Shown here: positions 1,966 to 62,886 of the stretch, one piece after another
How positions within the stretch are numbered: the first letter of the stretch is position 1
Layout: each line of letters starts with the position of its first letter
Sequence record: LC819005.1
DNA length: 64,000 nt
Direction: 5' to 3' (one strand)
Translations under genes and position numbers: made by a program
Notes under the pieces: generated by a model
What the model was told of the DNA's origin: nothing
The model's input: the letters and a program-made list of their open reading frames with translations, nothing else
Databases searched by the model: none

Positions 1966-3357
1966 TTACTTCGCAGCAGGCTTGGCTTTCGACACTTCGA
2001 CCGATTTCTCGACGTAGCGAATGAAAGACGCGGCGTTCTGGATGTTCACGCGCAGCAGCTGCGGCACGACGACAGTCGCGATAGCGGTGAGCGTCTTCAG
2101 ATACAGCTCGACCATCTTCACCGACTGACCGCTTTCTGCGACCTTGGCAAAGCCTTCGATCTTGGCGAGACGATCGGCCAGATGGTTCTGGTCGGCGTTC
2201 CACTTCTTGACGAGTGCGAGCATGTCGGTGGCGAGCTTCTTCTCCACCACGGGGATGCTGCCGCCTTCAACGAGCGGCACTTCACCCGGAGCGACACCAG
2301 CCTTCACGACACCGCCCTGATCCATCGGCTTCGAGAAGGCGAGGTACAGTTGCAGGCCGCCGATCTGCGGCTCGGTCATGCCGCCTTCGAGCTGTGCATT
2401 GCTCGTGAGCTTGGGCTTGAGTTCGCTGACGATCGAGTCGGGGATCTTCGAGTATTCGAACACGTGCTGGCGCAGACCACCGAGGATCTTCGACAGTTCG
2501 ACGTACACCGGCAGGGCGTCTTCTTCGCCCTTCTTGGCGGTTGCCGACAGTGCGTTCAGGAACGAATCGTTGAAGAAGCCGTAGAGCGTCTTCGTGGCGA
2601 ATTCGGCGTAGCGACGGAACTGAGCGTTCGCATCGCCTGCGTTCTTCACCATACGCAGCGACTTGATGAACGCTTCGTCGTCGATCGTGGCATTGCCGTC
2701 GATCTGGTTGACGGCTGCGAGCGCGCGCTCGGCCTTGGCCGTCAGACCGTTGAACTTCTGCGCGATGCTGCGCACGACGTTGACGATCCAGGCGATGATC
2801 TTCTTGATACCGGCGAGCAGACGATCGAGAATGCTCTTCGACTTTTCCTTCGCTGCAGCACCGACGGCCGCCACTTGACCTTCCGGTCCGGCTTCGGCAA
2901 CGTCGCTGTCTTCCAGAGCAGCCAACGCATTGGGGATATCCACGCGCAGACAGATCTGTTCGAGTGCCATGGCGTAACCCGCCACGGTGGCCTTGTTGGC
3001 CTGGCCGGTCTTCAGCGCCATATCGCAGATGTAGGCGAGCTCTTCCAGAGCAGCGCCGGCGGAAACAGCTTCTTCCAGATCCTGATTGACGGAATCCGAC
3101 GTGTTGCTGATTTGTTCGACATCGTTATCGAACACTTCGCCCGACAGGTCGTCGTTTTCAGCAGCGAGCGTGGAGTTCTTTTCCATCAACGTGGCGACAG
3201 CATCCGTGTCGGAGTCGATGTTGGTTTGCGTAACGGGCGGAGCGCCCGCGCTGCCTGCCTGCAACTGAGCGACAGAGTCAACTGCGGATACATCCGTGCT
3301 CGCCTCTTGCTGCAGCTCTTCCAGAGCGGCAGTAATGAAAGGACTGCGTTTTTTCAT
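1966..3357 (-). CDS. Internal head protein paralog (start MKKRSPFITAALEE)
   Basis: Several ALE sites in an acidic propeptide, then helix ILDRLLAGIKKIIAWIVNVV. Start placed at 3357 by analogy with the neighbours. Confidence 0.8.
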   Translation of the reverse strand: MKKRSPFITAALEELQQEASTDVSAVDSVAQLQAGSAGAPPVTQTNIDSDTDAVATLMEKNSTLAAENDDLSGEVFDNDVEQISNTSDSVNQDLEEAVSAGAALEELAYICDMALKTGQANKATVAGYAMALEQICLRVDIPNALAALEDSDVAEAGPEGQVAAVGAAAKEKSKSILDRLLAGIKKIIAWIVNVVRSIAQKFNGLTAKAERALAAVNQIDGNATIDDEAFIKSLRMVKNAGDANAQFRRYAEFATKTLYGFFNDSFLNALSATAKKGEEDALPVYVELSKILGGLRQHVFEYSKIPDSIVSELKPKLTSNAQLEGGMTEPQIGGLQLYLAFSKPMDQGGVVKAGVAPGEVPLVEGGSIPVVEKKLATDMLALVKKWNADQNHLADRLAKIEGFAKVAESGQSVKMVELYLKTLTAIATVVVPQLLRVNIQNAASFIRYVEKSVEVSKAKPAAK

Positions 3358-15899: not shown

Positions 15900-15934
15900 G
15901 CATAAGGGCCGGGGTCACCCCCGGCCTTTTATGC
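15900..15934. terminator. Bidirectional terminator with GCATAA...TTATGC flanks
   Basis: AGGGCCGGGG/CCCCGGCCTT stem between convergent genes. Confidence 0.8.
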
Positions 15935-15946
15935 TGTCGTGAGACT

Positions 15947-24620: not shown

Positions 24621-25460
24621 TTAAACGTCCAGGACGTTCTGGGAGGGGTAACTGCGGTTATTGCCCCAGATCAGACGCAGACCGCCGTCTAAGCCTGGTG
24701 AGTTCGGGTTGACTGCACGAGAAGAGGAAGAGCCACCGCCAAACTCTCCTGAGCCGGTGAGCTTCGAGCCGGGGTTACCGTTGGTGTTGCGTGTTGAGAC
24801 AGCTGCACCACTCGCTCCTAAACCTAGCAGTCCAGTGCCGCCGCCTCGACCACCAATACCGTTGTCGGTGTATGAAGAGCCACCTGTACCGCCCGAAGCA
24901 CCGCCGCCACTACCGGCAACGCTGGCAGAAATATCCGATCCATTCCCGCCCGGGCCGTTGTATCCACCTGCACCGCCACCACCCGCAACCGCGTAGTCAT
25001 AGGCCACGCCATTGCCGCCGTTACCGCCCCCGTCGCCCAGATAGCTACCACCCTTGCCTCGGGACGAGTCAGAGCTCGTAGCGCCACCAGCATCCCCGCC
25101 ATAGCCCGCAAAGAGCTTAGTGGATGCACGAGCCAAATAAGTGTCACCGCCTCGTGTACCGATCGCTGCACCCACACCAGTAATACCGAGCGCGCCAACC
25201 ACCACAATCAAGTGTTCACCAGGTGTGACAGGAATCGCATTCTTCCAACCCAGTCCACCGCCGCCACCTGACGAACCCCAGTGGCCGGTGTCGGCATACG
25301 TGTTGACCCAACCGCCGCCACCCGCGCCGATACCTACACCGCAAAGGAAGTAGATGCCGTCGGGTACGACAAAGTCATACGTGCCCGGCGTTGTGAACGC
25401 CATTTGTCCCGGGACGCCTACCGTGGCTTTCTTCGGGACAGACATTAACATTTCAAACAT
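24621..25460 (-). CDS. Glycine-rich virion accessory protein
   Basis: AFTTPGTYDFVVP...GAGGGG...IPVTPGE...GLRLIWG pattern. N-terminus MFEMLM. Confidence 0.75.
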   Translation of the reverse strand: MFEMLMSVPKKATVGVPGQMAFTTPGTYDFVVPDGIYFLCGVGIGAGGGGWVNTYADTGHWGSSGGGGGLGWKNAIPVTPGEHLIVVVGALGITGVGAAIGTRGGDTYLARASTKLFAGYGGDAGGATSSDSSRGKGGSYLGDGGGNGGNGVAYDYAVAGGGGAGGYNGPGGNGSDISASVAGSGGGASGGTGGSSYTDNGIGGRGGGTGLLGLGASGAAVSTRNTNGNPGSKLTGSGEFGGGSSSSRAVNPNSPGLDGGLRLIWGNNRSYPSQNVLDV

Positions 25461-25477
25461 CAGACCTTCCCATGAAA

Positions 25478-26326
25478 TTAAACGTCAGGTACGTAGTTCG
25501 GATATTGACGACCATCGCCCCAGACAATCCGACAAGCACCGGACAAAGCCGGTATGTTGGCAAAGCCACTACCACCTGCTTCAGAGGCACCACCACCGAA
25601 CTCTCCTGAACCTGGATACTGCGAACCCGCTCCGCCGTTCGTGTGGGCTGATGAACCTGCGCCAGCACCATTAGCGCCCTGACCCAAAATACCTACACCG
25701 CCGCCGCGGCCACCAGAGCCAGCCGTACCGCCGCGCACTACACCGAAACCACCGCCACCGCCACCGCCAACACCATTACCGCCCGCCTGAGTGGCACCGC
25801 CGCCTGCGCCGCCGCTACCTGAGTAACCACCGGCTCCAGAACCACCGCCTGCCTGTTCCCAGAAATAGATGTTCGCACCACCATCCCCACCACCATCACC
25901 GACACCGCCAGCATTAGTGTTGGTAATGGTGGTGCTTTCTGTTTGTCCGCCGCCCGTACCGCCATTGGCCTGGAGAAGTACTGTGCTACCACGCAGAATC
26001 TGAGTGTTACCACCGTTGGCAGCGCGACCAGTCTTAACACTTGCCCCACGAAGGCCCACGACAACTGTCAGGATTTCACCAGGGGTAACCGGAATACTCG
26101 CTTTCCAGCGTAAAGAACCGCCGAAACCCGTCGAACCCCATGTACCGCTAAAGCCAGAGGTATGATCCCAACCACCGCCGCCTGCGCCGACTCCTACTGC
26201 TGAAATAGAGAACACTCCGGCCGGAACCTGGAACTGATAAGTCCCGGGGGTCGTAAAGGCAGCTTGTCCAGCGCCGCTTGTGCTGCCTCCCGATACTTTG
26301 GATGTTACTAATAAAGCTTCTAACAT
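25478..26326 (-). CDS. Glycine-rich virion accessory protein, paralog of 24621-25460
   Basis: Shares AFTTPGTY, IPVTPGE, GSGEFGGG and RIVWG with its neighbour. N-terminus MLEALL. Confidence 0.75.
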   Translation of the reverse strand: MLEALLVTSKVSGGSTSGAGQAAFTTPGTYQFQVPAGVFSISAVGVGAGGGGWDHTSGFSGTWGSTGFGGSLRWKASIPVTPGEILTVVVGLRGASVKTGRAANGGNTQILRGSTVLLQANGGTGGGQTESTTITNTNAGGVGDGGGDGGANIYFWEQAGGGSGAGGYSGSGGAGGGATQAGGNGVGGGGGGGFGVVRGGTAGSGGRGGGVGILGQGANGAGAGSSAHTNGGAGSQYPGSGEFGGGASEAGGSGFANIPALSGACRIVWGDGRQYPNYVPDV

Positions 26327-26369
26327 AACCCTATCCTCGGCTGGGTCTATTTAACATAGTATTTTGACA

Positions 26370-26402
26370 GCATAAATGGGAAGAGGGGGCTACCCTCTTC
26401 CC
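26370..26402 (-). terminator. Intrinsic terminator ending TTTATGC
   Basis: GGGAAGAGGG/CCCTCTTCCC stem after the GNAT gene. Confidence 0.75.
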
Positions 26403-26406
26403 GTGA

Positions 26407-26907
26407 TCACCATGCGTACCTGCGACGACGCTTCGTTTCGACGTATTCTTCCATGGCGACTTCCTGTTTAGGCAGGATGTACCAATGGCCTTTTACGCCT
26501 TCGTAGCTCAAAGGCTTACCTTTCTCGAAACCGAGTTTGGTAAAGAGCTTGATCGATTTCTCGTTGCTCTCTTCAATCCAGACAATGCCAGGACTGTGCG
26601 TTGTGAAGAAGTCTCTTAACGCCCACTGCATAATACCCATGCCCCGATACGCTGGGTCCAGATACAGTGCGCCTGAACGCCAGTGCCGCACATCCCTCAC
26701 CATCGTAGTGTACGGCATAAAGAAGCCGGCTATGCGCCCGCTAGCCATATCTACGATGACTTGTTTGATACCTGGTCGACGCAGTTCTTCAGAGTCAAGA
26801 AACGGATCTTCTTCCGCATCGGCGATCGTCTGCATCAACTTCTTCTGCATGGACAGAGGGAGTCTTACATTCTTGATCACTTGATACTGCTTAAACTCGT
26901 TACTCAT
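26407..26907 (-). CDS. GNAT-family acetyltransferase
   Basis: Acetyl-CoA motif A LYLDPAYRGMGI and motif B NEKSIKLFTKLGF. Confidence 0.85.
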   Translation of the reverse strand: MSNEFKQYQVIKNVRLPLSMQKKLMQTIADAEEDPFLDSEELRRPGIKQVIVDMASGRIAGFFMPYTTMVRDVRHWRSGALYLDPAYRGMGIMQWALRDFFTTHSPGIVWIEESNEKSIKLFTKLGFEKGKPLSYEGVKGHWYILPKQEVAMEEYVETKRRRRYAW

Positions 26908-26928
26908 CCCTCCTCTCCCAAATTGGCG

Positions 26929-26962
26929 GCATAAAAGAAAATCGGATGGTTTCCCACCCGAT
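26929..26962 (-). terminator. Intrinsic terminator closing the candidate ncRNA
   Basis: ATCGGGTGG-GAAA-CCATCCGAT then TTTCTTTTATGC on the minus strand. Confidence 0.75.
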
Positions 26963-27037
26963 TCCCTGTATTGCTAATGGACAGCCCGCGCCCTACAAAC
27001 CTCCCAATATAAGGCGACCCTACGAATGTAAAACCAG

Positions 27038-27356
27038 GTGGAGGACATCTTAACGTAGTTGGTCGATTACGCTGCTGTTACTACCCAAGGGGCAGGTTCC
27101 TGCAAGTGGATTGAATGCCTTCGTCCTTTTGCGGGATACTGGCATTCGAACCGTACAAATTGTGAAAGAGAAGAGCACCGCGTCTCCCGACGTGGGTGCG
27201 ACTCTGTGGATTCTACGGAACGTGATTGGACTTCCAAATGATTACTTCTTAACGGCATGCCCTGTCCGCGCATCAGTCTCAGTGTCTTTTGCCTTCGCCG
27301 TGTCCCTGAGGATTTACGGCCATTACGCGACGTTCGAGACCTTACTTCGTTTCCAC
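27038..27356 (-). ncRNA. Candidate structured non-coding RNA, about 320 nt
   Basis: ORF-poor gap. 5' GTGGA pairs with 3' TCCAC, an H-type pseudoknot is possible, a TATG ends exactly at the first base, and an intrinsic terminator follows. Confidence 0.4.
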
Positions 27357-27376
27357 ATAACATACGCTAAGCACTG

Positions 27377-27724
27377 TTAATTTTTACCCTGCCCTTTCTT
27401 CATCTCATTCAAGAGATCGTTGAGCTCCTGGGTTTCTTGAGGTGCGTGCTTTTCCATCACCTCCAGCATCAAGTCGCACATGTAGGGCGGCTGATTCAGG
27501 AACTCCGTAAAGGACATGTGAAACGCCGTTCCAACCCGAAGGTCACGGAACGCTTCCATGCGCTCGCGCAAGCGAGAGGCGACGATCGTATCCTCACACC
27601 AGTGATGTCTCACCAAAGCGAAGTGATCGTCGGGTTGTCCACGATGGTCGTAGATACCATGCGCCTGCTCATACCGCTCCCGCATCAAGATCTGTACGTC
27701 GGTGCTCACGAACCTTTTGGGCAC
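27377..27724 (-). CDS. Small tail/baseplate assembly chaperone-like protein; possibly the -1 frame extension of 27820-29553
   Basis: MSFTEFLNQPPYMCDLML resembles T4 gp51/GT-type chaperone tails. The frame stays open upstream past the slippery site with no other start codon. Confidence 0.65.
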   Translation of the reverse strand: MPKRFVSTDVQILMRERYEQAHGIYDHRGQPDDHFALVRHHWCEDTIVASRLRERMEAFRDLRVGTAFHMSFTEFLNQPPYMCDLMLEVMEKHAPQETQELNDLLNEMKKGQGKN

Positions 27725-27819
27725 GCGAGCAATGTCTCCGGTGTACTCCTCGATCAGGACGCCGTCGCCGAACTTCCAATCCCCAACATGCTTGGAATGG
27801 GCAATTTCGGCTTCGGTGG

Positions 27820-29553
27820 TCAGCGGCGGCTGATGATATCGACGCGCTGCGCGAGTAGGGTAAAAAAAGTGTTCACCACATCGAGCGGAATCAGGTGCGG
27901 GAAGCGGGGCAGACCCATTTCCTTGCCACTGGTTTCCGGGATCGCGACCAAGGCACGAGTTGAGTCGTCCTTGAACTTGTTGATCGCTTCTTCCAGGATG
28001 GCGGTGGCTTCCTCGTCCATCGACAGCACGTTCAGAATCTCCGCGATGTCCTCGCGGCTACTCGTTTCATGCCCTTCGATGAAGATCGACTTGATCCACG
28101 CACCGTTGTTCCGCAGACGCGACGCCTTGGCGTGCGTAGCGATCATCCGGTTGCGTTCCTGTTCGTTCGGGGCGGCCTGCGTGAACGTCGAGTCCACGGT
28201 CTGCACGATACCGGCGATCCAGTGCTCACCATCAGCGATGTAGTTGTCCACATCGGTTGCAGCCACCAGCACTTCCAGACCCTCACGGATCTTGACGCGC
28301 CGGCCCTGCGCCAGCGACGGAATGAACGTCGACTGGTATTCCTTCACGCGATCGAGCGTCATCGAACCACGCTGGCGGCTAACCATGTGGGAGCGATGCT
28401 TGGCGTCGAAGCTGGCGTTGTCCACCCACATCAGCTTGGCGATGTTGATCTTGGCCGAGATCGTCTGGGTATTCTCGATCCCTTCCTTGGTCACCAACGA
28501 GCGCACGTAGTCGAAACCACGCGGCCAGATGAGACACGCCATGCCCCAGAACAGGATGTTCAGATCCTGAATCTTGATCAGTGAACGCAACTCTTGATTG
28601 CTGTCCACCCGCACGCTGTGTTCGTAGATGTGCTCGAAACAGAAGTCGAGCAACCAGCTGTTGATGTAGCTCTGCTCGTTGGAGAACACCAAACCAAAGG
28701 TCTCGCGACCCAGCTCGATCTTCTCTTCCTGCAGACGACGTTGCAGCTCGATCAGCGACGACTCGGTCGGCGCCGACAGCGTGATCCAGAAGCCCGAGTG
28801 CCACAGCGGAATCGAGACGATACCACCGAAGCCCATGATCGAGCGCACCCGCAGGATCGCCTTCTCGCCGGTGTAACCACTGGCGCCAGCTTCTGCGAGC
28901 CGCGGCGGCGTAAAGCCGAGCTTGCCCGATTCGGTTTCCAGATACTGCAGGTAATTACTGCCTTCAGCTTTGACGGACGATTCGAAACGTCGATCGATGA
29001 ATACACTGCGCGAAGCAGCGGCCACGATCGACTGGTTCCAATCCGCACCTTTGCCGCTGCGCAAGGCATTCGGCGAGACGAACGCACGAATGCGCTCGTC
29101 GACTTCCTTGCCACGTTCAGCGAGGAAGAACATCACTTCGCTCGTCCCGTTCAGGTCCGTGCGATCGGCCAGAGGCACCGGCTGGCTGGCGTTGTATTCC
29201 ATCGTCAGCGTCACGCCCTTGTTCTCCGAGGGCTCGAACGTCAGGCCCTCGTAGTCGGCGTGCACGGCATCGGCCGCACCGATGTTAAAGCCGCCGCCGG
29301 TGGTTTGACCCACCAGCACCGGACGATCCTTCTGGTCCTTCGGCTGCGCTTGCGGAGCTGCAGCGGCCTGCTGCTGGGCAGGCGCAGCTGCTTGTGCTTG
29401 AACAGGCGCTGCCGGAGCAGCAGCCTGCGGTGCAGGTGCCCGGATGGGCGAGGGGACCTTCACCACCGGGTCCTGAGCAACCGGCTGGGCCGGCAACTCA
29501 GCTTGCGGGGTGACGTCGATCCCGGCCTGCACTTGATCGTTATTCTCACTCAT
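27820..29553 (-). CDS. Conserved hypothetical protein, putative tail/baseplate-hub assembly chaperone (T4 gp26-like segment)
   Basis: 577 aa with a P/A/Q-rich N-terminus. QDLNILFWGM resembles the gp26 DxxYLF motif. Ends just after T TTT TTT. Confidence 0.65.
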   Translation of the reverse strand: MSENNDQVQAGIDVTPQAELPAQPVAQDPVVKVPSPIRAPAPQAAAPAAPVQAQAAAPAQQQAAAAPQAQPKDQKDRPVLVGQTTGGGFNIGAADAVHADYEGLTFEPSENKGVTLTMEYNASQPVPLADRTDLNGTSEVMFFLAERGKEVDERIRAFVSPNALRSGKGADWNQSIVAAASRSVFIDRRFESSVKAEGSNYLQYLETESGKLGFTPPRLAEAGASGYTGEKAILRVRSIMGFGGIVSIPLWHSGFWITLSAPTESSLIELQRRLQEEKIELGRETFGLVFSNEQSYINSWLLDFCFEHIYEHSVRVDSNQELRSLIKIQDLNILFWGMACLIWPRGFDYVRSLVTKEGIENTQTISAKINIAKLMWVDNASFDAKHRSHMVSRQRGSMTLDRVKEYQSTFIPSLAQGRRVKIREGLEVLVAATDVDNYIADGEHWIAGIVQTVDSTFTQAAPNEQERNRMIATHAKASRLRNNGAWIKSIFIEGHETSSREDIAEILNVLSMDEEATAILEEAINKFKDDSTRALVAIPETSGKEMGLPRFPHLIPLDVVNTFFTLLAQRVDIISRR

Positions 29554-29568
29554 GTTGCGAGTTCCTGG

Positions 29569-30372
29569 TTACGCCGGTTCGGCTTCCGTTTCAGCAGCGG
29601 GTGCAGCTTGCGGATCTTCGGGGACCGGTACGGGATCAGCGCCCGTCGTATCGGCGACGATGTTCTTGATCTTCGCGAGATTCGACATCAGGCTGTGGTT
29701 CAGCTGGCTGGCGAGGTCGGGGTTGGTCTCCTTCAGCGCGATCAGAGCTTCTTGCAGCTGCTCCGAAGCGTGCACGACGATCGGCATCAGCGCCGAGTCG
29801 TAGCGTTCCATGAACTGAACGTATTCCGAGAACACCGCGCACGAGATCATCAGATCTTCCTGGCTGGTAGCGCCGGCGTCCTTGTCCTTGTGCTGGTTGC
29901 GGATCTTGTTCAGTTCTTCGACCAGACGCTTCGTGTCGTTCGTGATCGCATGGATGTTACGCGAGAGCAGGCGCTTGTTACGCACCTGCTCCAGCAGTTC
30001 TTGTTCGCGCAGCAGCGGCACGAGCGCGAGCGACGTACGCAGCAGGTCGACGCAGGCGAGGTAGATGCCGTTGACTTCGGCCCAGGCGTTGTTGGTCGCG
30101 AAATAGTGGTCCGCGTGCTTTTCCCACGAACGCTTCTCGCCCTTACGCGAGCGCTGGTCCTTGCCGATCGTGCCCTTGCCCATTTCCATGACGGCGTCGG
30201 ACAGGAGCTTCTTCGCGCGCGGCGACGGCACGGCGGCCGCTGCCGTCATCAGTTGACCTACCGTGGCGATCGCGGCGACGGAGTCTTGTTGCTGTTCTAC
30301 TTCTTTCAGCTGGGCAGCCGGCGTCTTGGGCCATTTGATGCCCGGATTCTTGGGTCGGGATTTCTTTGCCAT
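29569..30372 (-). CDS. Conserved hypothetical helical protein
   Basis: 267 aa with typical codon usage. First gene of the minus-strand operon. Confidence 0.7.
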   Translation of the reverse strand: MAKKSRPKNPGIKWPKTPAAQLKEVEQQQDSVAAIATVGQLMTAAAAVPSPRAKKLLSDAVMEMGKGTIGKDQRSRKGEKRSWEKHADHYFATNNAWAEVNGIYLACVDLLRTSLALVPLLREQELLEQVRNKRLLSRNIHAITNDTKRLVEELNKIRNQHKDKDAGATSQEDLMISCAVFSEYVQFMERYDSALMPIVVHASEQLQEALIALKETNPDLASQLNHSLMSNLAKIKNIVADTTGADPVPVPEDPQAAPAAETEAEPA

Positions 30373-35221: not shown

Positions 35222-35443
35222 ATGAGCGGCTGCTGTATCGCTCCGGATACCACGGAGCTGGAAGAAGAATGCATGGACCGGCTAATGCCGTGGAAGTGCT
35301 ACTCGAATGATCTGCGTCAGTTCGAAGAGTTTCCTACCATCACTGCCATGGCTGCGGCTAAGGGCGTGAGCGTGGAGATGATCATGAATGCCATTGGCGG
35401 GAACAAGGGCAACTTCGAAGGCATGCATTTTGTCAAACGCTGA
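35222..35443 (+). CDS. Small protein with an HTH-like (NUMOD1-like) segment
   Basis: EEFPTITAMAAAKGVSVEMIMNAI. GGAG RBS. Confidence 0.55.
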   Translation: MSGCCIAPDTTELEEECMDRLMPWKCYSNDLRQFEEFPTITAMAAAKGVSVEMIMNAIGGNKGNFEGMHFVKR

Positions 35444-35522
35444 TCCGAACGGGGAGGGCAACCTCTCCGTTTATGCCGCCTATTCGATGTAGTACCTTTC
35501 CATCCACTTTAATAACAACGCC

Positions 35523-60430: not shown

Positions 60431-62539
60431 TTAGTAGTTGCCCGTGCCACCGACGTTGGTGGTGCGAGCGTGCGCGTAGCGACCGAACGAGCCGGCCGAC
60501 ACACCTGCTGCAGCGTTGCGACGCATGCCCGACGGCACGAACGAACCAGCCGAACCCAGGCCCGTCGGCAGGTTGCGCATGTACGGTGCAACCATACGTG
60601 CGGTGCCCTGCGGTGCCGAGACGCCGACCTTCGTTTCGTACACGACGCCAGCTTCCGCGACAGCGGCGGCCAGTGCGTAGATGAACGTCGGGTTGAACGT
60701 CACGCGAACCGAGCGACCGGTGATGGTCATCGATTCGAACATGCCTTGCTGGATACGACGCGTTTCCGTCAGACGGAACATCGGATCGACTTCTGCGTTG
60801 GCCTGCAGGTTCGACCAGTCGTTGATGGTGTCCAGCTCGCTGTCGCCCGTTGCGTTGAGCGTGCAGAGGTAGTCACCGTCGCGGATGTCGCGCTTGCCGC
60901 CGGCCGCGAAGTAGAAACCGTTGTTCACGTACATGTTGTCGTTGAACACCGGAGCCTTCATCTGGCCGCCGTTCGCTGCCTTGTAGATCGGCGTGAACTT
61001 GCCGCCCGTCAGCAGGTCGCTTGCGTCGAACAGGTCCTTGATGGCGTTCTGGTCACCGCGTGCAGCTGCAGCGAACACTGCCGTGATCCAGCTCGACGGA
61101 CCGCTTTCCGGCACGTCCATGGAGATGAGCAGCGGCTCCATGTGGAAGTACGTCTGGATGACGGCTGCCAGTGCTGCGTCGTTGATCTGCGCGCTGTTGA
61201 GCGGCAGACGACCGGCCTTCGGCAGTTCGCCGCCGATGTAGCCGAGCGGCATTTGCTGCGGTGCTTCCAGGCCGATTGCCGACAGGTCGCGGATGTTCAT
61301 GCCGCCTTCCTGATGGCTCGCGCCGTTCTTGTGCTGCTGAATCAACGCGCCGATCCAGCGGTTTTCGTTGTACAGCGATTGCGTCGTCGCGAGACCCTGC
61401 AGGATCACCGGCAGTTCGCACACGTCGTCCGGTGCATCGATGTTCGTGATGACCAGGCGCGGCGTGTAGATCTTCAGCTGATCAGCCGTTTGTGCCATGT
61501 TGCCCAGACCACCCAGTGCTGCGGGTGCGCTGGCCGACGACGGCGTCGACGTCAGGTCGATGTAGCCGAGGATCTGCGTGAGCAGCGTCTTCGCTTGCGA
61601 CGTGTTGTACTGGAACTCGCCGGTGTTCTGGGTTTGCTGCTTGCCCGTCAGCATCGACATTTCCAGCACGACGTCACCGCGCACCGGCTGGCCGTTCAGG
61701 TCGACGAAGTGACCCCACGACGACTTGATTTCGTTCTGGAACGTCTGTTGCGCCATTTCCGGCGTGATCGTCCACGAATCTTCGGCGACCATCGTCGCGA
61801 GCAGCACCGACGTTGCCGTCGTGGCGTTCGCGATCACGTTGCGGACTGCTTCTTCCGAGCGCAGGTCCAGGTCAGCCGGCACGACGTTCGATTCTGCGTC
61901 GATCAGCGTGTAGCCGCGGAACTTGTCCTGGATGATCTGCACAACACGGCCGCGCAGCGTCGCGTCGTATGCGTCCGCCGGAACGATCAGGCGTTCGAAC
62001 TTGATGCCGTTGCCGAATTGCGCTTCGACAGCGGTCTGGCCGCGCGCGGTTTGCGCGAGCAGCAGCGTGTGGTACGCGACGTACTTTTCAGCCGAGTTTT
62101 CCTGGCCCTTCAGCGTTGCCGCGACGACGAACGCCGAGATCAGCAGGCCTTCCTTCTCGCCGTCCAGCGCGAAGTAGTCGAACTTGACCGGCTGCTCGAC
62201 TTCGCTCTCGGCGATCTTGTCGGTCACTTCGACGATGGCGCGCATGGCCTGCGACGTAGCAGCGCGGGAGATGCCGTAGTTTTGACGGGTCGAGATCATG
62301 TTGCGGATTCCTTGCGATTGAGTATTGTTGGTGGTTTGTTGCGAAGCGGGTTGCTGGGTTTTCGGTGCGGCACCCTGCGTGCCGGTGGTCGTGCCAGCCG
62401 CGGCGGCGAAGCTCTGCTTCTTGCCGTGTTGCGCGGGCTGGTGTGCCGGTTTCGATTCAGACGTCGACGCCGATTTGTCGGCAGCCTTGTTGTCCTTGTC
62501 GTTACCGTTGCTACCGTCGTCATCGACTTCGATTGCCAT
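60431..62539 (-). CDS. chmA: Chimallin, major phage nuclear shell protein (phiKZ gp54-like)
   Basis: 702 aa immediately upstream of nvRNAP beta'. YTPRLVITN and RVTFNPTFI segments, disordered termini, and very biased codon usage suggesting high expression. Confidence 0.85.
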   Translation of the reverse strand: MAIEVDDDGSNGNDKDNKAADKSASTSESKPAHQPAQHGKKQSFAAAAGTTTGTQGAAPKTQQPASQQTTNNTQSQGIRNMISTRQNYGISRAATSQAMRAIVEVTDKIAESEVEQPVKFDYFALDGEKEGLLISAFVVAATLKGQENSAEKYVAYHTLLLAQTARGQTAVEAQFGNGIKFERLIVPADAYDATLRGRVVQIIQDKFRGYTLIDAESNVVPADLDLRSEEAVRNVIANATTATSVLLATMVAEDSWTITPEMAQQTFQNEIKSSWGHFVDLNGQPVRGDVVLEMSMLTGKQQTQNTGEFQYNTSQAKTLLTQILGYIDLTSTPSSASAPAALGGLGNMAQTADQLKIYTPRLVITNIDAPDDVCELPVILQGLATTQSLYNENRWIGALIQQHKNGASHQEGGMNIRDLSAIGLEAPQQMPLGYIGGELPKAGRLPLNSAQINDAALAAVIQTYFHMEPLLISMDVPESGPSSWITAVFAAAARGDQNAIKDLFDASDLLTGGKFTPIYKAANGGQMKAPVFNDNMYVNNGFYFAAGGKRDIRDGDYLCTLNATGDSELDTINDWSNLQANAEVDPMFRLTETRRIQQGMFESMTITGRSVRVTFNPTFIYALAAAVAEAGVVYETKVGVSAPQGTARMVAPYMRNLPTGLGSAGSFVPSGMRRNAAAGVSAGSFGRYAHARTTNVGGTGNY

Positions 62540-62621
62540 GATGCTGTTCCTTTACTAATGATGGTTAGATAAACAGGCTCTGCAGAGCTGTCTTGGAGCA
62601 TAGCGCACTGATACTCCAAGA

Positions 62622-62631
62622 TAGTAATATG
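62622..62631 (-). promoter_or_regulatory. Early promoter motif CATATTACTA upstream of chmA
   Basis: Exact 10-mer repeated three times upstream of nucleus-block genes. Contains the phiKZ early consensus TATTAC. Confidence 0.7.
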
Positions 62632-62886
62632 AGACTCAAAAATCTTTGAATCCAATTCCATCAGGTAGACAGCGTATGCCGAGGTGCCGCGACATCATAG
62701 TCGCGGGCAGAAGAGTGCACTTTGGCGGATTCTCTTCTACATAAAGATATATGGTGGTAAATTTTAACCTTTGTTCTTATTCTCCGTATGAAACACGGGT
62801 GAGCCACCCAATCTTGTAGACAAATTCAGCGGGACTCCCACTCTCAGAGGCCCAGCACCCAGAACTCACTATAGTCAGATCTAGCT

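What the first reader, a model, noticed from the sequence alone, without database searches (positions are those of the whole stretch)
26929..27360. Candidate ~320-nt pseudoknotted ncRNA with its own late-promoter TATG and terminator, showing tmRNA-like traits
Seen: a gap of about 430 nt between the chaperone ORF and the GNAT gene has no credible protein. On the minus strand, GTGGA (27356-27352) can pair with TCCAC (27042-27038). Further collinear 5'/3' pairings (GTA/TAC, GG/CC, TCGA/TCGA, ACG/CGT) form a long irregular closing helix. GCCGT/ACGGC crossed by CTCAG/CTGAG (27320-27278) gives an H-type pseudoknot near the 5' end. A 7-bp GAATGCC/GGCATTC stem lies at 27147-27113. TATG ends exactly on base 27356. 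Established: phiKZ nvRNAP late promoters are TATG with G as +1. Inference: size, early pseudoknot, GGTCTCGAAC (compare tmRNA GGTTTCGAC), a reading frame ending ...VVTAA-stop like an ssrA degron, and a 3' CTCCACC suggest a highly diverged tmRNA-like or a new RNA class. A canonical T-arm at the 3' end is missing.
Basis: partly seen in the sequence, partly recalled or inferred. Interest (0 to 1): 0.72.

Follow-up and report, generated by a model that had tools for sequence, protein, structure and literature searches.

The report
New structured RNA of jumbo phages
The gap holds a gene for an undescribed, highly folded non-coding RNA of about 300-430 nt that is conserved in RP12-like jumbo phages and stands out in soil RNA samples; it is not a tmRNA, and its function is still unknown.

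Summary
The 470-nt gap between gp275 and the GNAT gene of Ralstonia jumbo phage FLC1-1B holds a real gene for a structured non-coding RNA on the minus strand (about 27356 to 26933). A homologous element follows the gp275 homologue in all 15 relatives recovered (RP12/RP31, FLC4-3B and metagenomic lineages), whatever gene comes next.

The shared core is:
- a 5' helix (P1) that closes a multi-stem domain;
- a GNRA-tetraloop hairpin;
- a conserved single-stranded UUCUUUnACAAUUYGA (ACAAU invariant);
- a hairpin with an AGUA/GAA (loop-E-like) internal loop;
- an intrinsic terminator.

The tested helices covary far above shuffled and slid controls. The 5' flank matches the phiKZ middle-promoter layout (AAAATTAAC at -24, TATG with G27356 as +1). 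Three rhizosphere metatranscriptomes hold 156-317-nt contigs of a close relative that cover only this RNA, not the flanking genes.

The tmRNA idea fails. ARAGORN finds nothing in 14 loci. Rfam finds nothing on the element here or in 12 relatives. The 5'/3' closing helix, the pseudoknot and the 'VVTAA' frame are not conserved. Function is unknown; I favour a trans-acting, protein-binding RNA. The scan earlier found a different structured RNA elsewhere in this genome.

The parts
27376..27384 (-). AAAATTAAC, an upstream promoter element of the phiKZ middle-promoter type. It is centred 24 nt before G27356 and overlaps the gp275 stop codon.
   Evidence: the composite AAAAWTWAY-N8-20-TATG occurs at 2 loci in 64 kb against 0.05 expected. 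An AAAAWTA(A)C-like A-rich motif (consensus read by eye) stands at this place in all 15 relatives, also where the stop codon lies further upstream. The phiKZ motif AAanTTACc at -24 is described in PMC4666361.
27356..27364 (-). TATGTTATG; G27356 is the presumed transcription start.
   Evidence: It is conserved as [TA]ATG[TA]TAT[GA] in relatives. TATG with the last G as +1 in phiKZ: PMC4666361. The start has not been mapped.
27352..27356 (-). P1, 5' strand (GUGGA).
   Evidence: It pairs with 27210-27206. An equivalent helix is found in all 15 relatives with compensating changes (GUGAAA/UUUCAC, GAAAAC/GUUUUC, GUGGAAAUAC/GUAUUUCCGC).
27206..27210 (-). P1, 3' strand (UCCAC).
27275..27341 (-). P2 arm: P2a GGUCUC/GAGACU (27341-27336 with 27280-27275), P2b GUC/GAC (27331-27329 with 27286-27284), stem GCCG/CGGC (27320-27317 with 27300-27297) and tip UCC/GGA (27312-27310 with 27305-27303).
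   Evidence: Model R2: 99% of cells paired, 8 of 17 pairs with changes on both sides, 0 of 500 shuffles as high, slid controls 0.04-0.10 against 0.451.
27211..27274 (-). P3 region, a variable arm inside P1. It includes the palindrome GGCAUGCC and GGAAGUCCAAUCA.
   Evidence: Its structure is not resolved.
27175..27199 (-). GNRA-tetraloop hairpin: GCACC-CA-CGUC-GGGA-GACG-C-GGUGC.
   Evidence: Model R1: helix 1 is 86% paired and 7 of 9 pairs change on both sides. The loop is GGGA or GUGA in relatives.
27155..27170 (-). Conserved single-stranded motif CUCUUUCACAAUUUGU (family consensus UUCUUUnACAAUUYGA; ACAAU is invariant).
   Evidence: invariant columns. No repeat or complement elsewhere in the FLC1-1B genome.
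27113..27147 (-). Hairpin with an AGUA/GAA (loop-E or sarcin-ricin-like) internal loop.
   Evidence: and (helix 2: all 6 pairs change on both sides).
26963..27112 (-). 3' extension specific to the FLC/RP12/L120 clade. It holds the hairpin GCAGG-AAC-CUGC (27103-27092) and a long hairpin (27065-27015) whose 15-nt loop carries CCUCCACC. Short-form relatives lack the extension.
   Evidence: One compensating change is seen (CUACG/CGUAG to CCACG/CGUGG in RP12).
26933..26962 (-). Intrinsic terminator: AUCGGGUGG-GAAA-CCAUCCGAU followed by UUUUCUUUU.
   Evidence: A hairpin plus U-run closes the element in every relative.
26926..26935 (-). TTTATGCCGC: start cassette of the next gene (GNAT, start codon 22 nt downstream). 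It marks the downstream boundary and is not part of the RNA.
   Evidence: (11 matches against 3.3 expected).

Best explanation
This is an independently transcribed gene for a new family of highly structured, stable non-coding RNA found in RP12-like jumbo phages.

Transcription (inferred): it starts at G27356 from a phiKZ-middle-type promoter (AAAATTAAC at -24, TATG at +1) and ends at the terminator 26962-26933. That gives about 424 nt in FLC1-1B; the conserved core is about 290-310 nt.

Fold (supported by covariation):
- helix P1 (27356-27352 with 27210-27206) closes a multi-arm 5' domain;
- then a GNRA-tetraloop hairpin;
- then a conserved single-stranded UUCUUUnACAAUUYGA (ACAAU invariant);
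- then a hairpin with an AGUA/GAA loop-E-like internal loop;
- in this clade, an extra 3' arm.

Mechanism (inference only): I think it most likely acts in trans as a protein-binding RNA, either the core of a phage ribonucleoprotein or a decoy for a host factor. The conserved single strand and the loop-E module would be the binding platform.

Odds: about 0.9 that it is a real, independent structured RNA family; about 0.35-0.4 that it works as a protein-binding scaffold or decoy.
For: Synteny
- Every gp275 homologue with DNA in hand is followed by a 365-600-nt non-coding gap that holds the element.
- The next gene differs: GNAT, SNase, or DNA polymerase on the opposite strand.

Homology
- A covariance model seeded only on distant relatives finds window 27101-27206(-) at E 6e-7, FLC4-3B at 1e-6, RP12 at 8e-6 and L154 at 1e-5.
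- It gives a single hit in each of the whole FLC1-1B, FLC4-3B and RP12 genomes.

Covariation
- Core: 79.8% of cells paired against 60.2% when shuffled; covariation score 0.527 against 0.221 (0 of 500 shuffles as high); slid controls 0.07-0.14.
- 5' arm: 99% paired, 8 pairs compensated, 0 of 500 shuffles as high.
- P1 is present in all 15 relatives.

Ends and coding
- The promoter composite occurs at 2 loci in 64 kb against 0.05 expected; the phiKZ promoter architecture is described in PMC4666361.
- A terminator closes the element in every relative.
- No conserved ORF.

Expression
- In three rhizosphere metatranscriptomes the only long matches (156-317 nt) in a 5.4-kb stretch are contigs at 27018-27341, 27012-27310 and 26983-27138, at depth 13-24. 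Elsewhere there are only matches of 18-36 nt.

Strand
- The model hits, the U-run terminator, 6 G-U against 0 A-C cells in the 5' arm and the better z-score all point to the minus strand.
Against: - No experiment maps the 5' or 3' end. The metatranscriptome contigs carry no strand, come from a relative, belong to one study only, and were found by searching with this stretch.
- Only 15 sequences are available, and the two alignments used for pair counts were fitted to the models.
- L120 and L159 match the core model weakly (E 0.3-0.4).
- The model of the 5' arm does not recover the distant group, so homology of that arm across the family rests on P1 and on reading by eye.
- The G-U versus A-C count on the core alignment is not decisive (24 against 19 when the core and 5'-arm alignments are pooled; all 19 A-C cells lie in the core alignment).
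- Nothing tested here bears on protein binding; the one complex prediction was not folded.
Confidence: 0.6

Rival explanations
1. A highly diverged tmRNA or tmRNA-like RNA: the 5' and 3' ends form a tRNA-like domain, and an internal frame ending in ...VVTAA serves as a degradation tag.
For: The size is similar. GUGGA (27356-27352) can pair with UCCAC (27042-27038) in FLC1-1B. GGUUCGAAU resembles a T-loop sequence.
Against: - ARAGORN finds no tmRNA in the window or in 14 loci.
- No Rfam tmRNA model matches, even at E up to 10 here and up to 1 in 12 relatives.
- The 3' UCCAC is absent in L120/L152 and in the short forms, while the 5' end pairs internally in all 15 relatives.
- There is no G-U at acceptor position 3.
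- GGUUCGAAU overlaps the 5' strand of the loop-E hairpin's outer stem and is not kept in RP12.
- The tag frame is broken in FLC4-3B and differs in L120 and RP12.
- The proposed pseudoknot clashes with a covarying helix.
Confidence: 0.02
2. A catalytic RNA: a new ribozyme, for example self-processing or acting on another RNA.
For: The RNA is large and conserved, with a GNRA tetraloop, a loop-E module, a multi-arm junction and an invariant ACAAU. Such features are typical of compactly folded RNAs like group I/II introns and RNase P (own knowledge). Two of the three metatranscriptome contigs end at 27018 and 27012, just after the long hairpin.
Against: No similarity to any ribozyme family in Rfam. 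No tertiary contact or pseudoknot could be supported. Contig ends are not RNA ends, and one contig runs on to 26983.
Confidence: 0.1
3. A base-pairing regulator or sponge. The conserved single strand, or the CCUCC loop of the 3' arm (which resembles an anti-Shine-Dalgarno sequence), would pair with phage or host RNAs.
For: The AU-rich single strand is flanked by hairpins. CCUCCACC lies in a 15-nt loop conserved between FLC and RP12, and UCCUCCAC is also seen in L162.
Against: No complement of the 16-nt motif exists in the FLC1-1B genome within 3 mismatches, apart from one chance-level hit. The CCUCC loop is missing in the short-form relatives and altered in L120. Host targets could not be searched.
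Confidence: 0.12
4. A cis-acting element rather than a trans-acting RNA: a structured 3' UTR or processing and stability element of the gp276/gp275 transcript, a transcription insulator between modules, or an RNA or DNA element of replication next to the DNA polymerase gene.
For: It always lies directly after the gp276/gp275 gene. In many relatives it lies next to the convergent DNA polymerase gene. Hairpin-plus-TATG cassettes stand on both sides.
Against: It has its own promoter-like composite and terminator. The metatranscriptome contigs cover the element but not the upstream gene. Compensating changes with G-U pairs argue for RNA rather than double-stranded DNA. No iterons or AT-rich origin features were seen.
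Confidence: 0.12
5. A small protein gene that annotation missed.
For: A 98-aa ORF (27067-27363, -) is open in FLC1-1B.
Against: The ORF is frame-shifted in FLC4-3B and absent in the other relatives. The longest ORFs in relatives lie on either strand and are unrelated. Substitutions follow base pairing, not codons.
Confidence: 0.01

Closest known systems
tmRNA (SsrA)
   Same: Similar length. It is a stable structured RNA that some large phages encode (own knowledge), with its own promoter and terminator.
   Different: No tRNA-like domain, no T-arm, no conserved tag frame and no supported pseudoknot. ARAGORN and Rfam are negative.
Large ornate RNAs of unknown function linked to phages (ROOL, GOLLD; also HEARO)
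   Same: All are large, intricately folded RNAs often found in phages or prophages, with no known function. RNAs of this kind were also noticed through high abundance in metatranscriptomes (own knowledge; a cryo-EM preprint on GOLLD and ROOL was listed, abstract only).
   Different: No sequence or structure match to those Rfam models. This RNA is smaller (290-430 nt) and confined to one jumbo-phage clade, at a fixed place after the phiKZ gp77 homologue. Multimer formation was not tested.
phi29 pRNA
   Same: A phage-encoded structured RNA that works as part of a protein machine; it is a model for the 'RNP component' reading (own knowledge).
   Different: No homology. pRNA is about 120-174 nt and specific to phi29-like phages. 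No link to packaging is shown here.
The other structured RNA of the same genome (earlier scan note s1-157009; LC819005.1 218386-218727)
   Same: Same phage clade and a similar size (about 300 nt); reported as conserved in RP12-like phages.
   Different: It is a different family: model R1 hits only one place in the genome, and reading its sequence shows no shared motif. That RNA is described as a leader of a small membrane-protein gene, whereas this one has its own terminator before the next gene.

Membership tests
tmRNA | A tRNA-like domain: the 5' and 3' ends form an acceptor stem with G3-U70 and a 3' (A)CCA. | tested here: not met
   The 5' GUGGA pairs with an internal segment (27210-27206) in all 15 relatives. 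The 3' UCCAC is present only in FLC1-1B/FLC4-3B (ACCAC in RP12) and is lost in L120/L152. Position 3 would be G-C, not G-U.
tmRNA | A T-arm with a T-loop next to the 3' end. | tested here: not met
   GGUUCGAAU (27152-27144) overlaps the 5' strand of the loop-E hairpin's outer stem, is internal, and is not kept in RP12.
tmRNA | A conserved tag reading frame with a resume codon and a C-terminal ...AA followed by a stop. | tested here: not met
   The frame ending in VVTAA is shifted in FLC4-3B and reads differently in L120 and RP12.
tmRNA | Pseudoknot PK1 upstream of the tag. | tested here: not met
   The CUCAG/CUGAG stem is not conserved, and CUGAG belongs to the covarying helix P2a.
tmRNA | Recognised by ARAGORN or by the Rfam tmRNA covariance models. 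| tested here: not met
   (ARAGORN on the window and on 14 loci: none). (Rfam at E up to 10 here and up to 1 in 12 relatives: none).
Any Rfam 15 family (GOLLD, ROOL, HEARO, 6S, RNase P, SRP, group I/II introns and others) | A covariance-model match at or near the gathering score. | tested here: not met
   No match on the element in the window or in 12 relatives.
Group I intron | Interrupts a gene whose exons join after splicing. | tested here: not met
   gp275 reaches the end of its PHROG profile (114 of 115 aa against positions 146/147). Downstream genes differ between relatives.
Independent structured ncRNA gene (generic) | Conserved base pairing with compensating changes, and no conserved ORF. 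| tested here: met
Independent structured ncRNA gene (generic) | Its own promoter and terminator. | tested here: inconclusive
   The sequence motifs are present and conserved, but the ends have not been mapped by experiment.
Independent structured ncRNA gene (generic) | A discrete, abundant transcript. | tested here: inconclusive
   Contigs that cover only this RNA occur in three metatranscriptomes. They come from a relative, carry no strand, and give no end mapping.
phiKZ-type middle promoter | AAanTTACc centred near -24; some middle promoters also have TATG at +1. | tested here: met
   AAAATTAAC (27384-27376) is centred 24 nt before G27356. The definition comes from PMC4666361. Promoter activity is not testable here.
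Loop E / sarcin-ricin (bulged-G) module | An internal loop with 5'-AGUA-3' opposite 5'-GAA-3'. | tested here: inconclusive
   AGUA/GAA is present in 10 of 15 sequences. L156 has AGUG with CCAAG, and L159, L160, L162 and L173 have UAGGA with a short 3' side. The three-dimensional shape is not testable here.

The most novel reading that the evidence does not exclude
A new class of large, compactly folded phage RNA, specific to one clade of phiKZ-related jumbo phages, which may be the most abundant stable phage transcript in nature. It would work either as a ribozyme or as the RNA core of a so far unknown phage ribonucleoprotein that acts on host or phage gene expression.
Probability: 0.3. Interest if true: 0.9.

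Novelty: categorically new. Interest (0 to 1): 0.7.

Why it matters
Few large structured RNAs are known in phages, and nearly all were found in prophages or metagenomes without a culturable system. This one sits in isolated, sequenced phages (FLC1-1B, FLC4-3B, RP12, RP31) that infect a tractable plant pathogen, so it can be tested directly.

It has a well-defined architecture and an invariant motif to mutate, and it shows signs of very high abundance in soil RNA. Relatives of phiKZ separate transcription from translation and fight host defences mainly at the RNA level, so an abundant dedicated RNA could reveal a new layer of that biology.

It is 'new' at the level of RNA family. Whether its mechanism is also new is unknown.

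Tried and rejected
- DNA pattern scans of IMG/VR and of JGI metagenomes with the conserved 5' and 3' blocks gave only RP12, one IMG/VR relative and chance hits in coding DNA.
- MAFFT plus RNAalifold on the whole 5' domain of 15 sequences predicted no pairs, because the alignment was too poor. mafft-qinsi and mafft-xinsi are not installed.
- Model R2 (5' arm, close group only) did not recover the distant group, even with filters off.
- A pseudoknot between the conserved single strand and the P2 internal loop (UCAAA with UUUGA), or with CAGUAAAAC, was examined by eye and dropped as inconsistent among relatives.
- A CCUCC/GGAGG pairing in the 3' extension has one compensating change in L120 but only three lineages, so it is left open.
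- The idea of a tetraloop receptor (CCUAAG in L120) does not fit the canonical 11-nt receptor.
- The idea of a CsrA/RsmA sponge was dropped because the GGA loops are not conserved (GUGA in four relatives).
- The central motif as a repeated DNA promoter was dropped: it is unique in the genome.
- More distant phiKZ-like phages (phiKZ, 201phi2-1, FLC9, RTH11, RSF1, Xoo-sp14) have no comparable gap at the syntenic place and no credible model hit. The RSF1 hit is only a GNRA-loop terminator.
- A complex prediction of gp275 with the RNA core was not folded by the tool and counts for nothing.
- The G-U versus A-C strand test on the core alignment was not decisive.

Full report
**Origin and setting.** The window is part of Ralstonia phage FLC1-1B (LC819005.1, 290 kb), a jumbo phage related to RP12. 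The finding lies in the gap 26908-27376 between two minus-strand genes: gp275 (27377-27724) and gp274, a GNAT acetyltransferase (26407-26907; Pfam PF00583). The gene before gp275, gp276, is the homologue of phiKZ gp77, a gene shared by phiKZ-like phages. An earlier scan note (s1-158501, not tested here) says that gp276 and gp275 are joined by a -1 frameshift.

**Check of the observation.**
- The gap encodes no conserved protein. The 98-aa ORF is already split between frames in FLC4-3B and has no counterpart further away.
- Folding energy alone is only mildly unusual: z = -1.82 for the minus-strand RNA and -0.67 for the other strand.

**Conservation and synteny.**
- The gap aligns with FLC4-3B (92.7% identity) and with RP12/RP31 (about 76%), even though RP12 has a different downstream gene, an SNase-like nuclease. 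One IMG/VR contig adds another relative.
- A protein search with gp275 gave 35 clusters at 56-91% identity.
- All eleven clusters for which DNA could be fetched show a 365-600-nt gap directly after the gene. The next gene varies: GNAT, other ORFs, or the convergent DNA polymerase.
- Read side by side, all 15 distinct sequences share:
  - a small hairpin followed by [TA]ATG[TA]TAT[GA];
  - a 5' GUGGAAAC-like strand;
  - a GNRA hairpin (missing in L159, the weakest match);
  - the motif UUCUUUnACAAUUYGA (ACAAU invariant);
  - a hairpin with an AGUA/GAA-type internal loop;
  - a terminator hairpin followed by TTTATGCCGC-like sequence.
- FLC1-1B, FLC4-3B, RP12, L120 and L152 carry an extra arm of about 150-180 nt between the loop-E hairpin and the terminator. 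L155, L156, L162 and L173 are short forms of about 290-310 nt.

**Structure and covariation.**
- Model R1 covers the GNRA hairpin, the motif and the loop-E hairpin. It was built only from eight of the more distant relatives.
- R1 found the six relatives outside the seed plus the window at the syntenic place: window 27101-27206(-) at E 6e-7; FLC4-3B 1e-6; RP12 8e-6; L154 1e-5; L152 0.02; L120 0.3; L159 0.4. There was no other hit in the 64-kb window.
- On that alignment 79.8% of cells pair (shuffled 60.2%). The covariation score is 0.527 (shuffled 0.221, 0 of 500 as high; partners slid by 1-3 columns give 0.07-0.14). 14 of 18 pairs show changes on both sides.
- Model R2 covers the 5' arm in the six closer sequences. 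It gave 99% paired cells and 8 compensated pairs, with 0 of 500 shuffles as high.
- Both alignments are fitted to their models, which favours the structure. The slid controls and the many pair types per column argue that the signal is real.
- The 5' strand GUGGA(AAC) finds a partner about 150 nt downstream in every sequence, with compensating variants: GUGAAA/UUUCAC in L155, GAAAAC/GUUUUC in L161, and a 10-bp helix in L162 and L173.
Its second stem uses CUGAG, which belongs to the covarying helix GGUCUC/GAGACU, and CUCAG is not conserved.
- The homology of the 5' arm between the close and distant groups rests on P1 and on reading by eye; R2 does not reach the distant group.

**Ends (inferred from sequence).**
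- In phiKZ, late promoters are TATG with the last G as +1. Middle promoters carry AAanTTACc (AAAATTACC) centred near -24, sometimes together with TATG (PMC4666361).
- Here AAAATTAAC (27384-27376) is centred exactly 24 nt before G27356 of the second TATG.
- The composite AAAAWTWAY-N8-20-TATG occurs at only two loci in 64 kb, against 0.05 expected.
- The A-rich element is kept in all relatives, even where the gp275 stop codon lies further upstream. It is therefore a signal rather than a coding constraint.
- I read this as a middle-type promoter with its start at G27356.
- At the other end, the hairpin and U-run at 26962-26933 form an intrinsic terminator.
- The TTTATGCCGC that follows belongs to a recurrent cassette (strong hairpin, then TTTATGCYGY, then a long ORF 22-70 nt downstream) seen many times in the window. 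Here it serves the GNAT gene.

**Expression.**
- A search of public runs found three rhizosphere metatranscriptomes from one study.
- Laid on 5.4 kb (24800-30200) at 85% likeness or more, their only long matches are contigs of 317, 290 and 156 nt at 27018-27341, 27012-27310 and 26983-27138 (depth 13-24; differences in 12 substitutions plus 9 gapped letters over about 300 nt for the two longer contigs, 3 substitutions over 156 nt for the third). The other matches are 18-36 nt long, at 25696-25784 inside the glycine-rich gene and at 29290-29325; I read them as chance hits.
- DNA carry-over would cover the flanks as well. I therefore read this as a stable RNA of a close relative that far outnumbers the neighbouring mRNAs.
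- Limits: one study, contigs without strand, and contig ends are not RNA ends.

**What it is not.**
- ARAGORN finds no tmRNA or tRNA in the window or in 14 loci.
- Rfam 15 gives nothing on the element at permissive thresholds, here or in 12 relatives.
- The element is single-copy in FLC1-1B, FLC4-3B and RP12. It is not credibly present in phiKZ, 201phi2-1, FLC9, RTH11, RSF1 or Xoo-sp14, which also lack the gap at the syntenic place.
- The genome papers on RP12/RP31 and on FLC1-1B/FLC4-3B mention only tRNAs.
- Literature searches and two recent ncRNA-mining preprints gave no description of it.

**Mechanism.**
- Shown: a conserved, covarying, multi-domain RNA bounded by promoter-like and terminator signals.
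- Inferred: it acts in trans. The conserved AU-rich single strand between two conserved hairpins, the loop-E-like module (a common protein-binding and docking module; own knowledge) and the GNRA loop suggest a compact fold that presents a binding platform.
- I favour a protein-binding RNA, either a phage RNP core or a decoy for a host factor, at about 0.35-0.4.
- Alternatives: a ribozyme; a base-pairing regulator (no target in the phage genome); or a cis element of the upstream gene or of replication.
- None of these could be tested further with the tools. The complex prediction was not folded.

**Novelty.** This is a new RNA family with no detectable relative among described families, in cultured phages of a tractable host. 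A different structured RNA was reported by this scan elsewhere in the same genome (s1-157009). R1 does not hit it and its sequence shares no motif.

Noticed in passing
window, e.g. 26971-26926(-), 26402-26367(-), 42735-42692(-), 35432-35479(+), 37743-37701(-), 15913-15937(+): A recurrent cassette: a strong GC-rich hairpin, directly followed by TTTATGCYGY, then a long ORF 22-70 nt downstream. TTTATGCCGC with up to 1 mismatch occurs 11 times against 3.3 expected. It looks like a combined terminator and TATG-type promoter signal of this phage clade. RSF1 shows the same hairpin-plus-TATG layout (L184 about 1545-1508, minus strand).
   Followed up: partly
window 62740-62765 (-): The only other match in the window to the middle-promoter-like composite: AAAATTTACC, then 12 nt, then TATG. 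It lies about 80 nt upstream of the start of a 121-aa ORF (62296-62661, -).
   Followed up: no
L162 4701-4806 (-): A weak Rfam hit to the 3' part of a group I intron (23.6 bits, E 0.08), cut by the contig end, about 1.4 kb downstream of the RNA in a metagenomic relative.
   Followed up: no
L158 2903-2921: This relative has an extra self-contained hairpin GUGGAAAAAGCUUUUCCAC at the very 5' end, followed by a second GGAAAAG that forms P1. It looks like a local duplication of the 5' strand.
   Followed up: no
L155 about 3160-3215, L156 about 3140-3200, L162 about 3105-3125: In short-form relatives the loop-E hairpin is followed by G(C/U)GGCAU(A/U)A. That is the reverse complement, or nearly so, of the TTATGCCGC cassette, so the motif flanks the terminator hairpin on both strands. 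It could be an opposite-strand start site or an RNA-level pairing.
   Followed up: no
window 26407-26907 and the loci: The slot downstream of the RNA is a hot spot of gene turnover: GNAT in FLC1-1B and L154, an SNase-like nuclease in RP12, lectin-like or other ORFs elsewhere, or directly the convergent DNA polymerase gene.
   Followed up: partly
window 27095-27262 (several sites): Sequences conserved beyond their neighbours but not explained: the palindrome GGCAUGCC (27262-27255; kept in FLC1-1B, FLC4-3B, L120, L152) and GGAAGUCCAAUCA (27235-27223; also GGGAGUCCAAUCA in the distant L159).
   Followed up: no
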